Assembly: GCF_048593235.1 (NCBI RefSeq)
Contig: NC_133619.1
Coordinates: 227,182,454-227,246,453, forward strand
From: Sminthopsis crassicaudata
Taxonomy: Eukaryota
Reading direction: 5' to 3'
DNA: 64,000 nt
Below the pieces are notes generated by a model that worked only from the letters and a program-made list of their open reading frames with translations, was not told the origin of the DNA and made no database searches. Of the stretch, positions 20,601 to 24,711 are shown piece by piece. The position numbers were made by a program, and so were the translations under genes. Each line of letters begins with the position of its first letter. Positions within the stretch are counted from its first letter, which is position 1.

Positions 20601-23600
20601 NNNNNNNNNNNNNNNNNNNNNNNNNNNNNNNNNNNNNNNNNNNNNNNNNNNNNNNNNNNNNNNNNNNNNNNNNNNNNNNNNNNNNNNNNNNNNNNNNNNN
20701 NNNNNNNNNNNNNNNNNNNNNNNNNNNNNNNTTTTATTTTGTGTATTAAAAAATCATTATCCTGAGCAGTCCCTAGACTTCAGCAGAATACAAATGAGTC
20801 TGACATAAAATATATATATATATATATATATATATATATATAAAGAACTTGATCTAGGTGATCTGTTGTGGAACTCCACAACAATATCAATTATGTTTCT
20901 TCCTTACTATATTTCTTAGTATATTTACTCTCTGAAATTTAAGAGCAAATATCTTGCAGAGAAAATACAAAAGGAGTTCCATCATGGTAGCAGCCTCCAC
21001 TTCTCTTAGCTATAGTCCAAAAGCCTTAATAGTCCTTACCACCTCAAAATAGAACAGGCAACTATGGAGAACAATCAGTTAGCTCTAGAGAGAAAAAAAG
21101 ATTCAAGCTGACAAGGGTGTGGCTTCCACCTTGGCCAGCTATATAAAATTGCTGTGTGTAATTTCTAAACCACTACTTTTCTTAGGCTTTTCTGAGAAAG
21201 TTAACTGACAATATTCAGTAAACATAATAATGAGGCATTCTCAAGTCCAGGAAATGTCTTCAAACAGTAGTCTCTTCCATCCTAGTTCACGCAGGCAAGA
21301 GCCCAGAAATATACATTAAATCAGAAGAATAAAAGTTCAGGAGAACAGAAATGGAATTTGGCTTTCTAGGGTCTAGGTTCTGCCTTTTTTGGCCAGTCCT
21401 ATTCCTCTTCTTTACTGAGGAAACTAGTCCTGGATCCCCTCCTTGTGTGACAGATGCAGGGAACACTGCAGAGGAAAAGGAGGACTGCAACAACACAGCA
21501 GGGAAGCAAAGACAAGGTCATGGGCAGAGCTGGGTTACTACAGACTGGAAAACACAAGCAGGTAAAAGAAACAGGAACCAGGTTAGCTAAGGATTTATAA
21601 ATTGAATGGAAGGTAACATTCATAAATATGCATAATCTTAAAGAGAGAAACTCAGTGGCAGGCTATATAAGAGTCCTTAGTGGAAGTGTCCAAAGTGGGA
21701 GAGCTTCTGAGATGAGGAAAAAAAAAACAACTTGTGAATATCAATATTTAAATAATCTGTGACTAAGTCATTGGATAGACATCAGCATGTACTTGGAAAT
21801 AGTGAAAATCATGGTTTCTCCTAAGGAAAGGACCAAGATGGAAGACACAAACCTTGGTTTCAGTTCCCAGCAATATTTGTTTTCTTAACTAGTGAAAAAA
21901 ATTAATCTTCCTTTGCCTTCGAATTTCTAATGTCTATTAGAAATCCTCCCCATCTGAGAGTTAACTCGAGGAAAGGACACGAATATACATAAAGCCCAGG
22001 CCCCACTAAATCATAACAGTGTGGGGAGCAAGCTGGGCAGTAAAAAACACCCCTTGCTGACTCACCCTTTTTATCCCCTTCTGTCAATCTCTGCTCAGAG
22101 TCCCGGGGCCAGGACAGGAGAAGGCGGCAGCAACCACTGACCCATCGACCTACCACAGGCAGCTTGGACTCGCCCCCAACTCCTCCTAGTACCGGCCCAG
22201 CCCCTTCGAGAAACATAGGCCCCTGCTTACTGCCTACCTCACTGGGTATAGCAGGTCTGTACCTAATACCACTGCTATGTGTGATATCCATTTCCCTCCC
22301 CCCCTCCTCCAGTTAATGGCCTCAAGTCAATAAAACCATACAATTTTAACTATGCTGCCACCTACCCAGGGTTCCCTATTGATACAATATGGCTCTAATC
22401 TATCCTTCCTTACAACCCCAGTTGTTCCCCTAGTCACAAGTCTGGATTATGCCCCACATAAAATATCTCCAAAAGAAATTGGAATTTATGACTTAAAAGA
22501 GAACCTGAATTGTACCTACTTGAAGAGACCTCTCTAAAGGGACTCTTTCCTAGTTGTCCAAGGACATCCACTTGAGATCCCTGACTCCCAATCAGTGTCG
22601 TGCTAGAAAGGCAATAAGGGCAGTCTCTTGCAGGTTATATTTTCATGTCTACTTTTATTTGGCTGGAATATTTTCCCTTTCTGAGTTGGGTGTAAGAGCA
22701 CTTTCTGGGCAACCACTTCCACTCCCATCCCTATATTCCTCATCTTATTGGTTCCCACCTTAGCTACCAGCTCTGATCCCTTTTCCAGTCTTGGATTCTG
22801 ACATTATCTCTTAAAGTTTGACTTACATAATGACTAGAAGTCCTGAAATACCTATTTGGCAGTCAAGATTGGGCAACTTTTGTGACCAAATTGTGATTAG
22901 AGCCTGATTAGGGCTCCATGCCATCCCCAAGGTATCATCCATCAGATGTCTTGTTTTTAAACTTCTTCAGCATGGTCCCATTCCAGTGATAATTTTTCTC
23001 TTAATCCCTAGGGAGTAGCTGCTCACTCCTGTCTTCAGGGGATAAACCAGAGACCGTCATGGTTATTGGGAAGGGGCTGCTGGGGAGTAGTTCTCGCACC
23101 CCCTGCATCAGGGCTCGACTGCAGGTAACACTTGATAGCCTATCCCTGTTTGCAGCACAACTGCCCTAAATAGAGCCCAGATTCAGTGGATCCTTCGTTC
23201 TGGTAGTGGGAGGGAGAACATTCAATACTGGTCTGTTGCCAGAATGGAGTCTTGTTGCCAAATAGTCTATAGCTATCTACTTACCCCTCACAGCTAGCAG
23301 CAGTTCCCCAGCCCCCAATTTCAGTTTCCATAACCTCATTCATTCTTTCTTCCAATCACACCCCAACCTCAGCTTCCTAGCCTTGGCTTCTTTTGTCCTT
23401 GCCTTCAGCCTATCCTCTCTTTCTGCCCAGAACTGCCCGAGGAGAGTTTCCGCCAGGAGGGGTCCCGGATTCCCCAGGTAACACCTCTGGCTGCTGCTCC
23501 AAGGAGCAGCCATGACACCAATCCCAGGGTTCAGACAAGGCCCCCAGGCTAGTGTTGAATCCCTTTGGGTTGGCAGAAGTGGGTCTAGGCAAAACCTGTT

Positions 23601-24711
23601 TGGGCAACTGAGGATTATCTCCCCTGGCAGGGGCTGAAGAGTAGAGGAACTCTGAGGGAGGTTTGCATATACCCTATTGTTTCCCCATGGAGAGCTTTCT
23701 CTGCTCATCCAGCCCCTTGCCATGGAAGGGCCACTGAGGCTCAAAACTATGGATGGAGCACTTGGACCCTTTTACTATCCCCACCCTGGGTAAGACCCTG
23801 GAAGGCATAATCCAGACTAAATAAAGTCCTTTGCCCCAATCCCATATTACCTGTCCTAGCTAGGGGCAGGCCCTAGAAGTTCTAAGTCCTAGTTCCTTTG
23901 TGTTAATCCCCTACTGTACCATACTCCCTCCATGGAGATGCCAGAATCAAGTCCAGGAAGTGAGAAGCTCAGGGGAAGAGTCTAGCCCTCAGCGCCACCC
24001 CCTATCCATACAGGCTAGGCCCGGGTTGGGCCGGGGCTCACCGCCGCCTGGCAGAGGGATGAGAGGCTCTTCGGGCCCCACATCCCCCATCCCCCGGACC
24101 AGGGACAGCTCTGAGCCAGAGCCAGGATCCTGCTCTGTTGCACCAGGGTAAGCACAAAGGGCCTAACTATAGCCCTCTTCCACAGGCACCTAATTCCATG
24201 ACCCTGATATAGATCATGTAATTTTCACCCTCAATCTTGCCCTTATTGACTACATTATCTATTTACTAAGAATCTTAATTTTCCCAATTTCCTTTGTCAC
24301 CCTAGAATCCAAATGCACAATCCCAATGAAAAATTCAACCTCCTTGACTTTCCTCACACCAAGAAAACTTTAAGAGCTGAGACTGCCCCTTCCCCATAAA
24401 TGAGAGGCCTTAGAATACTGCTGTCCCATTCCCCATTCCCTACCCCCAATCACAAGACAAGTCATCCAAAATTCAGATCTTCCTAAACTGAGAGATGGGG
24501 CAGAATTCATCAGCCCAACTCCCCTCTTTTCTGTTACAGGCTGTACCCGGTTGGGCCCCCACGGCCCCACTCTGCCCCTGCCTCCTCACTCTTGTCCCGT
24601 CCCATCGTTTGCTCCCAGCCCCCAACTTGTTACAGTGGGGGAGCACTGGGACAGTCTGAGGGTTGTTCTATTATCAAGCCCTCCCCAATCACTCAGTCTC
24701 CCAGAGTATGA
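8610..24711 (+). CDS. AGBL5: Cytosolic carboxypeptidase 5 (CCP5, tubulin deglutamylase, M14 metallocarboxypeptidase), long isoform 884 aa
   Basis: join(8610-8827,9075-9246,9429-9592,10249-10426,10600-10778,11266-11722,12304-12473,12809-12944,13634-13836,14384-14586,22099-22254,23012-23124,24014-24147,24540-24711) = 2655 nt, all GT-AG with consistent phases. Starts [25 protein letters not shown] and ends TQSPRV. Motifs SRVHPGE, LNPDG, VDLHGH and YTLECNY are intact. Confidence 0.96.
12068..12131. repeat. (AT)n microsatellite, AGBL5 intron
   Basis: About 32 perfect AT units. Confidence 0.97.
14587..14654 (+). CDS. AGBL5: AGBL5 short-isoform C-terminus (read-through of the donor at 14587)
   Basis: In-frame [22 protein letters not shown]-stop, followed by AATAAA at 14696-14701. 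Confidence 0.7.
15513..15683. mobile_element. hAT/Charlie-like non-autonomous DNA transposon remnant
   Basis: Imperfect terminal inverted repeats tagggatttttaaac ... ggttaagaatccttg. No clear 8-bp TSD. Confidence 0.5.
17810..17862. repeat. Compound (TA)n(CA)n microsatellite
   Basis: Directly visible. Confidence 0.95.
19300..19700 (-). mobile_element. CR1/L3 LINE RT fragment
   Basis: The minus strand near 19433-19462 reads [10 protein letters not shown] (CR1-type YLDF motif). Further CR1-like pieces probably lie across about 18150-20560. Confidence 0.55.
20567..20731. other. Assembly gap (165 N)
   Basis: N run inside the large AGBL5 intron. Confidence 1.
20810..20842. repeat. (TA)n microsatellite next to the gap
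   Basis: Directly visible. Confidence 0.95.
23431..23477 (+). CDS. AGBL5: AGBL5 47-nt frameshifting cassette exon ([16 protein letters not shown])
   Basis: Long pyrimidine tract plus cccag acceptor and CAG|gtaaca donor. Phase 0 in, phase 2 out. Continues in the alternative frame of the next exon as [15 protein letters not shown]-stop (TGA 24060-24062). Confidence 0.8.

What the first reader, a model, noticed from the sequence alone, without database searches (positions are those of the whole stretch)
23431..24147. Frameshifting 47-nt cassette exon makes the next AGBL5 exon dual-coding
Seen: a well-formed 47-nt exon (23431-23477) lies between 23124 and 24014. Inclusion shifts exon 24014-24147 from [16 protein letters not shown]... 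to [15 protein letters not shown]-stop, giving an 814-aa isoform ending [31 protein letters not shown]. From memory a human/mouse isoform ends almost identically ([31 protein letters not shown]), which would mean both frames have been preserved since the marsupial-placental split. The stop is 85 nt upstream of the last junction, beyond the 50-55 nt NMD rule. It is therefore either a deeply conserved poison exon controlling tubulin deglutamylase dose, or an NMD-escaping isoform with an Arg-rich tail. With the intronic poly(A) site this gives three alternative C-termini (715, 814 and 884 aa).
Basis: partly seen in the sequence, partly recalled or inferred. Interest (0 to 1): 0.72.

Follow-up and report, generated by a model that had tools for sequence, protein, structure and literature searches.

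The report
Known conserved AGBL5 alternative C-terminus exon
The 47-base exon is real and conserved across mammals, but the shorter tubulin-deglutamylase (AGBL5/CCP5) isoform it makes is already annotated in Tasmanian devil and many other mammals and has been tested in mouse, so the only new point is that evolution protects the shifted reading frame more than the standard one.

Summary
Observation confirmed. An AG/GT-flanked 47-nt exon lies at 23431-23477. Including it shifts exon 24014-24147 into a frame that stops at TGA 24060-24062, 85 nt before the last junction.

It is not new. A Sarcophilus harrisii UniProt model (G3WF41) matches the window's exons at 98-100% and ends with exactly this tail. 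Nineteen database proteins from 16 species in 8 mammalian orders carry the same tail. Echidna has a diverged version with the stop in the same place.

In mouse, the primers for the annotated 846-aa transcript span the 47-to-134 junction, and that transcript was detected by RT-PCR. A mouse cDNA that stops in the penultimate exon is catalytically active.

New here: across seven therian genomes, 8 of 9 substitutions in the dual-coded 49 nt are silent in the shifted frame, and 7 of 9 change the standard frame (p about 0.001). pN/pS is 0.13 for the alternative tail and 1.44 for the standard frame in the overlap. This favours a translated Arg-rich isoform over a pure poison exon.

The parts
23012..23124 (+). 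Constitutive AGBL5 exon upstream of the cassette. It ends on a codon boundary (...RLQ), with donor cag|gtaaca.
   Evidence: It is 79-84% identical to placental genomes.
23406..23430 (+). Conserved polypyrimidine tract and acceptor of the cassette. An AG at 23407-23408 gives a possible upstream acceptor, which would make a 69-nt in-frame version starting at 23409.
   Evidence: 20 of 25 columns are invariant in 7 therians and 18 of 25 when echidna is added. The 69-nt version is used in the NCBI marsupial models P0131, P0132 and P0134.
23431..23477 (+). 47-nt alternative cassette exon encoding [15 protein letters not shown] plus 2 nt. Its length is 2 mod 3.
   Evidence: 40 of 47 columns are invariant in therians. 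In frame 1, 4 of 7 changes are silent; in frame 3 all 7 change the protein. It is present in 19 annotated alt-tail proteins.
23478..23502 (+). Conserved donor (GTAACA, no G at +5) and downstream intronic block.
   Evidence: 18 of 25 columns are invariant in therians, and the donor hexamer is identical in all 8 genomes.
23938..24013 (+). 76-nt upstream extension of the next exon (alternative acceptor ...catggag|). Combined with the 47-nt exon it restores the standard frame.
   Evidence: It is used in the Monodelphis, Antechinus and Macrotis models P0133, P0135, P0137, P0139 and P0156. These are predictions only; there are no read data.
24014..24147 (+). 134-nt penultimate exon, length 2 mod 3. 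Standard frame: [16 protein letters not shown]...
24014..24062 (+). Dual-coded segment. The shifted frame reads (R)[15 protein letters not shown] and then TGA at 24060-24062.
   Evidence: The TGA is invariant in all 8 genomes including echidna. 8 of 9 therian substitutions are silent in the shifted frame.
24540..24711 (+). Coding part of the last exon for the standard isoform (…SPRV, stop at 24709-24711). It serves as 3' UTR for the alt-tail isoform. The poly(A) signal is at 25032.
14586..14701 (+). Read-through of the exon ending at 14585. It adds 22 codons, a stop and AATAAA at 14696, giving the 715-aa short isoform (the counterpart of the human 717-aa, 11-exon transcript).
   Evidence: Placental 717-aa proteins P0118 and P0121. 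PMC12418683.

Best explanation
This is the mammalian AGBL5 (CCP5, tubulin branch-point deglutamylase) gene, from Tasmanian devil or a very close dasyurid. A conserved 47-nt alternative exon sits between the third-last and penultimate standard exons. Including it adds 15 codons plus 2 nt. The penultimate exon is then read one base out of register and translation stops 49 nt into it. The roughly 101-residue Pro/Ser-rich standard tail is replaced by a 31-residue Arg-rich tail.

Shown: this isoform is annotated across mammals and exists as RNA in mouse. Inferred: it is translated into a functional enzyme, because the shifted frame, not the standard frame, is the one purifying selection protects in the overlap.

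Whether part of the mRNA is also degraded by NMD, and what the basic tail does (localisation, microtubule or substrate affinity), is not known.
For: 1. Anatomy and numbers.

2. Gene identity: an exon hits Peptidase_M14, and OST4 lies just downstream on the minus strand, as it does in the elephant and snake loci. Sarcophilus G3WF41 (P0102) matches the exons at 98-100% and ends with the identical tail.

3. The same tail occurs in 19 database proteins from cat, dog, pig, pikas, naked and Damaraland mole-rats, lemming, vole, gerbil, squirrel, elephant, shrew, bats and devil.

4. All 7 therian genomes keep the exon, its splice sites and the shifted ORF with its stop. Echidna keeps NCPRKVRDWRGLGFP / ...RAGVHRYFAEG with the stop in the same place.

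5. Selection. In 24014-24062, 8 of 9 substitution states fall on shifted-frame position 3 and are silent there, while 7 of 9 change the standard frame (binomial p = 0.00097; Fisher test against the rest of the exon p = 0.0014). pN/pS is 0.13 for the alternative-tail ORF, 1.44 for the standard frame in the overlap, and 0.60 for the rest of the exon. Among 58 standard-isoform proteins, 14 of 23 classifiable replacements are silent in the shifted frame against 37% expected (p = 0.016).

6. Mouse. The primers for the annotated 846-aa transcript ENSMUST00000114700.9 map to the 47-nt exon and the 134-nt exon. The stated 136-bp product equals 45+91 nt across that junction, whereas the genomic span in Peromyscus is 608 nt. 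The transcript was detected by RT-PCR and peaks in pachytene spermatocytes. The mouse variant that stops in exon 15 (DQ867034) removes branch-point glutamate from tubulin and was the form used for all later work (PMC5269731).
Against: The stop lies 79-85 nt upstream of the last junction in every therian genome, so the 50-55-nt rule predicts NMD sensitivity.

The selection test rests on few substitutions (9 in the overlap, 16 in the whole tail) from 7 genomes. States were counted against a consensus, not on a tree.

The identification of DQ867034 with this exact tail is inferred from the paper's wording and exon numbering, not from its sequence.

Some lineages carry replacements in the shifted frame (Pteropus G>R, Ochotona H>P, mole-rats R>Q; also inferred W>R and W>C).
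Confidence: 0.78

Rival explanations
1. Pure poison exon (AS-NMD). Inclusion exists only to introduce a premature stop so that the mRNA is degraded, tuning CCP5 dose. The 31-aa tail would have no function of its own.
For: The stop is 79-85 nt before the last junction in all therians. The exon and its flanks are more conserved than neighbouring constitutive exons, as is typical of regulated poison exons. The donor is weak and conserved as weak (GTAACA).
Against: Substitutions concentrate on the wobble positions of the shifted frame, which an untranslated frame would not show. The isoform is the annotated canonical mouse transcript and is readily amplified from sorted germ cells. A mouse cDNA with a stop in that exon yields active enzyme. 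Partial NMD alongside translation is not excluded.
Confidence: 0.12
2. The cassette mainly works in frame-preserving combinations, and the 47+134 double inclusion with its short tail is a by-product. The frame-preserving options are: as a mutually exclusive partner of the 134-nt exon (47-in/134-out, about 855 aa here), as a 69-nt version from the acceptor at 23409, or paired with upstream or +5 acceptors of the 134-nt exon.
For: 47 and 134 (131 or 128 in other therians) are all 2 mod 3. Predicted isoforms use 47 joined directly to the last exon in Apodemus, Arvicanthis, Peromyscus californicus and camel (P0136, P0231, P0235, P0103). Others use the 69-nt or extended-acceptor versions in marsupials, elephant and rodents, and a rat model uses the +5 acceptor (P0244).
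Against: These are mostly automatic gene models, which favour long open frames. None of them explains why the first 49 nt of the 134-nt exon are constrained in the shifted frame. In frame 3 of the cassette (the 69-nt reading) all 7 therian changes alter the protein, and echidna has a stop there.
Confidence: 0.07
3. A chance AG...GT pair, or an annotation artefact copied between species.
For: Several of the supporting proteins are automatic or projected models.
Against: The exon is 93-95% identical between marsupial and placentals and its splice sites are intact in 8 genomes. There is independent RT-PCR and cDNA evidence in mouse.
Confidence: 0.02

Closest known systems
Sarcophilus harrisii CCP5 model UniProt G3WF41 (P0102, 897 aa)
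   Same: It matches the window's exons at 98-100% identity, includes the 47-nt exon, and ends with the identical 31-aa tail.
   Different: The model starts 83 residues upstream of the window's Met at 8610. It is an automatic model with no experimental support that I could see.
Mouse Agbl5 transcript ENSMUST00000114700.9 (846 aa) and cDNA DQ867034 (Kalinina 2007; Wu 2017, PMC5269731)
   Same: It has the 47-to-134 junction (from primer geometry), a stop in the penultimate exon, and an altered C-terminus. The enzyme is active on branch-point glutamate.
   Different: At 846 aa, against about 817 aa in other placentals, it probably also carries the 29-aa alternative exon 4.
Placental predicted isoforms with the same tail (for example Prionailurus X2 P0084, Ochotona X2 P0089, Heterocephalus X3 P0094, Loxodonta G3TZY2 P0097)
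   Same: The tail is TCPRRV[SPT]ARRGPGFPR + [15 protein letters not shown]. In the alt-frame part, 14 of the 18 placental tails are 15/15 identical to the window.
   Different: N is replaced by T at the first residue, with S/P/T variation at residue 7. A few lineages have single replacements.
Conserved poison (NMD-coupled) cassette exons, such as those in SR-protein genes
   Same: A short, frame-shifting, highly conserved cassette with conserved flanks that places a stop more than 55 nt before the last junction.
   Different: Here the shifted ORF itself shows protein-level purifying selection, and the product is an active, annotated enzyme isoform.
Dual-coding alternative-frame exons (the INK4a/ARF or XLalphas/ALEX type)
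   Same: The same nucleotides are translated in two frames in different isoforms across mammals.
   Different: The overlap is only 16 codons at a disordered C-terminus, and constraint is seen in one frame only.

Membership tests
AGBL5 / CCP5 orthologue (M14 cytosolic carboxypeptidase) | Peptidase_M14 catalytic domain | tested here: met
   The exon at 10597-10779 hits PF00246 (E = 4.7e-8, above the cut-off). The exon at 13610-13837 matches the PDB CCP5 chains 8v3m and 8v3q (E = 4e-25).
AGBL5 / CCP5 orthologue (M14 cytosolic carboxypeptidase) | Orthology and synteny (OST4 immediately downstream, tail to tail) | tested here: met
   P0102 (devil CCP5) matches at 98-100% over all exons. OST4 lies at 25721-25831 on the minus strand, and OST4 is also downstream in the elephant and snake loci.
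Known alt-tail CCP5 isoform (47-nt exon included, stop in the penultimate exon) | Cassette spliced to the normal acceptor of the penultimate exon, ending ...RRLAEG | tested here: met
   The window's exon-wise translations equal the C-terminus of P0102 and are near-identical to 18 other annotated proteins. The mouse amplicon geometry fits the same junction.
Known alt-tail CCP5 isoform (47-nt exon included, stop in the penultimate exon) | Junction reads in this species | not testable with these tools
AS-NMD poison exon | Inclusion creates a stop more than 50-55 nt upstream of the last exon junction | tested here: met
   85 nt here, and 79-85 nt in six placental genomes.
AS-NMD poison exon | Transcript stabilised when NMD is blocked | not testable with these tools
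   This needs UPF1 knock-down or cycloheximide RNA-seq.
AS-NMD poison exon | The shifted frame is not under protein-level constraint | tested here: not met
   pN/pS is 0.13 for the shifted ORF, and 8 of 9 overlap substitutions are silent in it.
Dual-coding exon | Both frames open and used in annotated isoforms across species | tested here: met
Dual-coding exon | Purifying selection in both frames | tested here: inconclusive
   The shifted frame is constrained. The standard frame in the overlap has pN/pS 1.44 (2 silent, 7 replacement changes), so it shows no constraint of its own. The counts are small.

The most novel reading that the evidence does not exclude
The 31-aa Arg-rich tail, not the textbook 886-aa-type tail, would be the more strongly selected C-terminus of mammalian CCP5. 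It would have been kept for at least the whole of therian evolution (with a recognisable echidna version) through a 16-codon overlap in which the 'canonical' frame evolves freely. This would imply an unrecognised function for the basic tail, such as localisation or microtubule or substrate affinity. It would also imply that its mRNA escapes or tolerates NMD despite a stop about 85 nt before the last junction. Human reference annotation and disease-variant interpretation, which centre on the 886-aa and 717-aa forms, might then overlook a functional exon.
Probability: 0.4. Interest if true: 0.5.

Novelty: already known. Interest (0 to 1): 0.27.

Why it matters
CCP5 is the only known enzyme that removes the branch-point glutamate of tubulin polyglutamylation. 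Its loss causes retinitis pigmentosa in people and male infertility in mice.

The isoform found here is already in the databases and has been the working 'CCP5' of mouse biochemistry, so the finding as stated adds little. The useful residue is evolutionary: in the overlap, selection protects the shifted frame. That argues that the short basic tail is a real, functional protein end and not just a decay signal.

It also shows that isoform choice (886-type, 817/846-type or 717-type) should be considered when comparing experiments and when judging variants near the gene's 3' end.

Tried and rejected

2. The search of protein representatives with the exon at 13610-13837 gave mostly fragments and no full-length mammalian representative. 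It served only to bootstrap a lynx fragment (P0014) for the word search.

3. The look-up of encoding contigs holds only the longest product of each gene, so isoform X2 and other entries (P0084, P0096, P0208) were not on record. No second marsupial genome could therefore be aligned.

4. Sauropsid origin of the cassette. Reptile and bird CCP5 end in ...ILSFCTEA, which resembles the translation of the mammalian acceptor region (ILSFCPE). The best blastn-short hit of the window's cassette region in the snake locus does fall on that terminal exon (15 nt, E = 0.076; 0 of 500 shuffles reach its score). However, an nhmmer profile of the 8 mammalian sequences gives E = 1.5 there and a better non-significant hit elsewhere. 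I rejected this as unsupported.

5. An RRVS protein-kinase-type motif in the cassette. The Ser is Pro or Thr in many orders, so it is not a conserved site.

6. Searches for papers on AGBL5 and NMD or poison exons found nothing relevant. PMC3798508 is not held.

All comparisons were made exon by exon or against database proteins.
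Full report
**What is there**

The window carries AGBL5 (CCP5) on the + strand, from the Met at 8610 to a stop at 24709-24711. OST4 lies tail to tail at 25721-25831 on the minus strand. One exon hits Peptidase_M14, and another matches the solved CCP5 chains 8v3m and 8v3q.

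The Sarcophilus harrisii UniProt model G3WF41 (P0102) aligns to every exon at 98-100%. The window is therefore Tasmanian devil or a very close dasyurid.

**The observation**

- Exon 23431-23477 is 47 nt long. It has a strong pyrimidine tract, acceptor cag| and donor |gtaaca.
- The upstream exon ends on a codon boundary at 23124. The next exon is 24014-24147, 134 nt.
- Translated exon by exon, the cassette reads [15 protein letters not shown] plus 2 nt. With the first base of the next exon this makes Arg. The shifted frame then reads [15 protein letters not shown] and stops at TGA 24060-24062, 85 nt before the last junction.
- The standard frame of the same exon reads [16 protein letters not shown]... 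and continues into the last exon (24540 onward) to ...SPRV.
  - 814 aa: P0102 has 897 residues, minus 83 residues upstream of the Met.
  - 884 aa: 814-31+101.
  - 715 aa: 22 read-through codons after 14585, with AATAAA at 14696.

**Limits on what I could do**

- All comparisons were made exon-wise or against database proteins.
The only typed patterns were two published 20-nt mouse primers, searched on the local Peromyscus locus.

**It is already known**

- Word searches seeded with database proteins returned 19 proteins ending in the same tail. They come from devil, cat, dog, pig, two pikas, naked and Damaraland mole-rats, lemming, vole, gerbil, ground squirrel, elephant, shrew, and Phyllostomus and Pteropus bats.
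- In the alt-frame part, 14 of the 18 placental tails are 15/15 identical to the window.
- Wu et al. 2017 (PMC5269731, citing Kalinina 2007) describe mouse CCP5 variants that use stops in exon 15 (DQ867034) or exon 16 (DQ867035). Both remove branch-point glutamate from tubulin. DQ867034 was the form used for recombinant enzyme and transgenes.
- Trovero et al. 2024 (PMC10953240) call the 846-aa transcript ENSMUST00000114700.9 canonical. Their primers for it lie in the 47-nt exon and the 134-nt exon.
- On the Peromyscus locus these primers are 608 nt apart. The stated product is 136 bp, which equals 45+91 nt across the cassette-to-normal-acceptor junction. The transcript was amplified from sorted germ cells and peaks in pachytene spermatocytes.
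- The human literature cites only the 886-aa and 717-aa RefSeq forms, in a '16-exon gene' whose canonical transcript has 15 exons.

**Conservation**

I fetched AGBL5 loci from elephant, echidna, deer mouse, pika, pipistrelle, dolphin, bushbaby and a pit viper.

| Segment | Identity of the window to the six placental genomes |
|---|---|
| Cassette plus 20-nt flanks | 93-95% (echidna 84.5%) |
| Upstream constitutive exon | 78-84% |
| 134-nt exon | 81-88% |
| Last exon | 68-76% |

All eight mammalian genomes keep a 47-nt exon with AG...GTAACA and the TGA at the same place. In the seven therians the penultimate exon is 134, 131 or 128 nt, always 2 mod 3, and the stop lies 79-85 nt before the last junction. 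Echidna reads NCPRKVRDWRGLGFP, then ...RAGVHRYFAEG and stop. Its longest annotated product (P0182) ends in that frame. I found no significant counterpart in the snake locus.

**Which frame is selected**

This is the new piece.

- Across the seven therians there are 9 substitution states in the 49 dual-coded bases. Eight fall on standard-frame position 1, which is shifted-frame position 3.
- All eight are silent in the shifted frame, while 7 of the 9 change the standard-frame residue. The binomial p is 0.00097. Fisher's test against the rest of the exon, where changes spread 10/11/15 over the three positions, gives p = 0.0014.
- In the cassette, frame 1 has 4 silent changes out of 7. In frame 3 all 7 change the protein, and echidna has a stop there.

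| Region and frame | pN/pS |
|---|---|
| 31-codon alternative tail | 0.13 |
| Standard frame, within the overlap | 1.44 |
| Standard frame, rest of the 134-nt exon | 0.60 |

An independent but weaker check uses 58 standard-isoform proteins. Of 23 classifiable replacement types, 14 are silent in the shifted frame, against 37% expected (p = 0.016).

The counts are small and were made against a consensus, not on a tree. The direction is consistent: the shifted frame is translated and constrained, and the standard frame there is merely kept open.

47 and 134 are both 2 mod 3. The 47-in/134-out combination is therefore in frame (about 855 aa here), and it is predicted in several rodents and camels (P0136, P0231, P0235, P0103).

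Other database models also restore the frame:
- a 69-nt version of the cassette from an AG at 23407-23408 (marsupial X2 models);
- an acceptor 76 nt upstream of 24014 (Monodelphis, Antechinus and Macrotis models);
- the +5 AG inside GCTAG|G (rat P0244).

These are largely automatic models. Only read data can rank them.

**Verdict**

The evidence favours a translated, NMD-tolerating isoform with a constrained Arg-rich tail over a pure poison exon.
- NMD sensitivity remains untested. It is not excluded as a second layer of regulation.
- As a discovery it is already known: annotated in this species' lineage, annotated as canonical in mouse, cloned and assayed.
- The modest added value is the frame-specific selection signal and the extension of the exon's age to the monotreme split.

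Noticed in passing
window 25718-25831 (-): OST4 (37 aa, Pfam Ost4 E = 1.8e-17) lies tail to tail about 0.7 kb beyond the AGBL5 poly(A) signal at 25032. The same arrangement is seen in the elephant and snake loci.
   Followed up: partly
window 20567-20731: A run of 165 N inside the large (roughly 7.5 kb) AGBL5 intron between 14585 and 22098.
   Followed up: no
window 23122-23130 and 23475-23483: The upstream constitutive exon and the cassette share the same donor context, CAG|GTAACA, with no G at +5. The cassette's GTAACA is identical in all 8 mammals.
   Followed up: partly
window 24014-24024; P0244 (rat EDM02973): There are tandem AGs at the start of the 134-nt exon (acag|GCTAG|GCCCGG here; the +11 AG of GCCCAG| is placental-only, the window reads GCCCGG). 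After cassette inclusion, the +5 acceptor would restore the standard frame, and one rat model uses it. Echidna lacks the +5 AG.
   Followed up: no
L002 (echidna) about 15290-15431: By alignment the echidna counterpart of the 134-nt exon is 126 nt (0 mod 3, not 2). Its longest annotated product ends in the shifted frame through an acceptor 87 nt upstream. The standard tail may be organised differently in monotremes.
   Followed up: no
L008 22306-22380 (snake) vs window 23409-23435: Sauropsid CCP5 proteins end in ...ILSFCTEA, which resembles the translation of the mammalian cassette's acceptor region (ILSFCPE). The nucleotide similarity is a 15-nt block and is not significant by nhmmer.
   Followed up: yes
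sauropsid proteins P0186-P0226: Squamates also have two alternative CCP5 C-termini. One is spliced (...ILSFCTEA). The other comes from read-through of the preceding donor (...DE|VWGGG...HPPY), a Lys/Arg-rich tail. Alternative basic tails may therefore have arisen more than once.
   Followed up: no
protein clusters of P0100, P0136, P0103: Some 90%-identity clusters mix CCP5 with the neighbouring-gene products KHK and TMEM214, through fused gene models such as Cricetulus ERE67393 (1781 aa) and Camelus EPY77386 (1412 aa). Cluster sizes therefore overstate the number of CCP5 isoforms.
   Followed up: no
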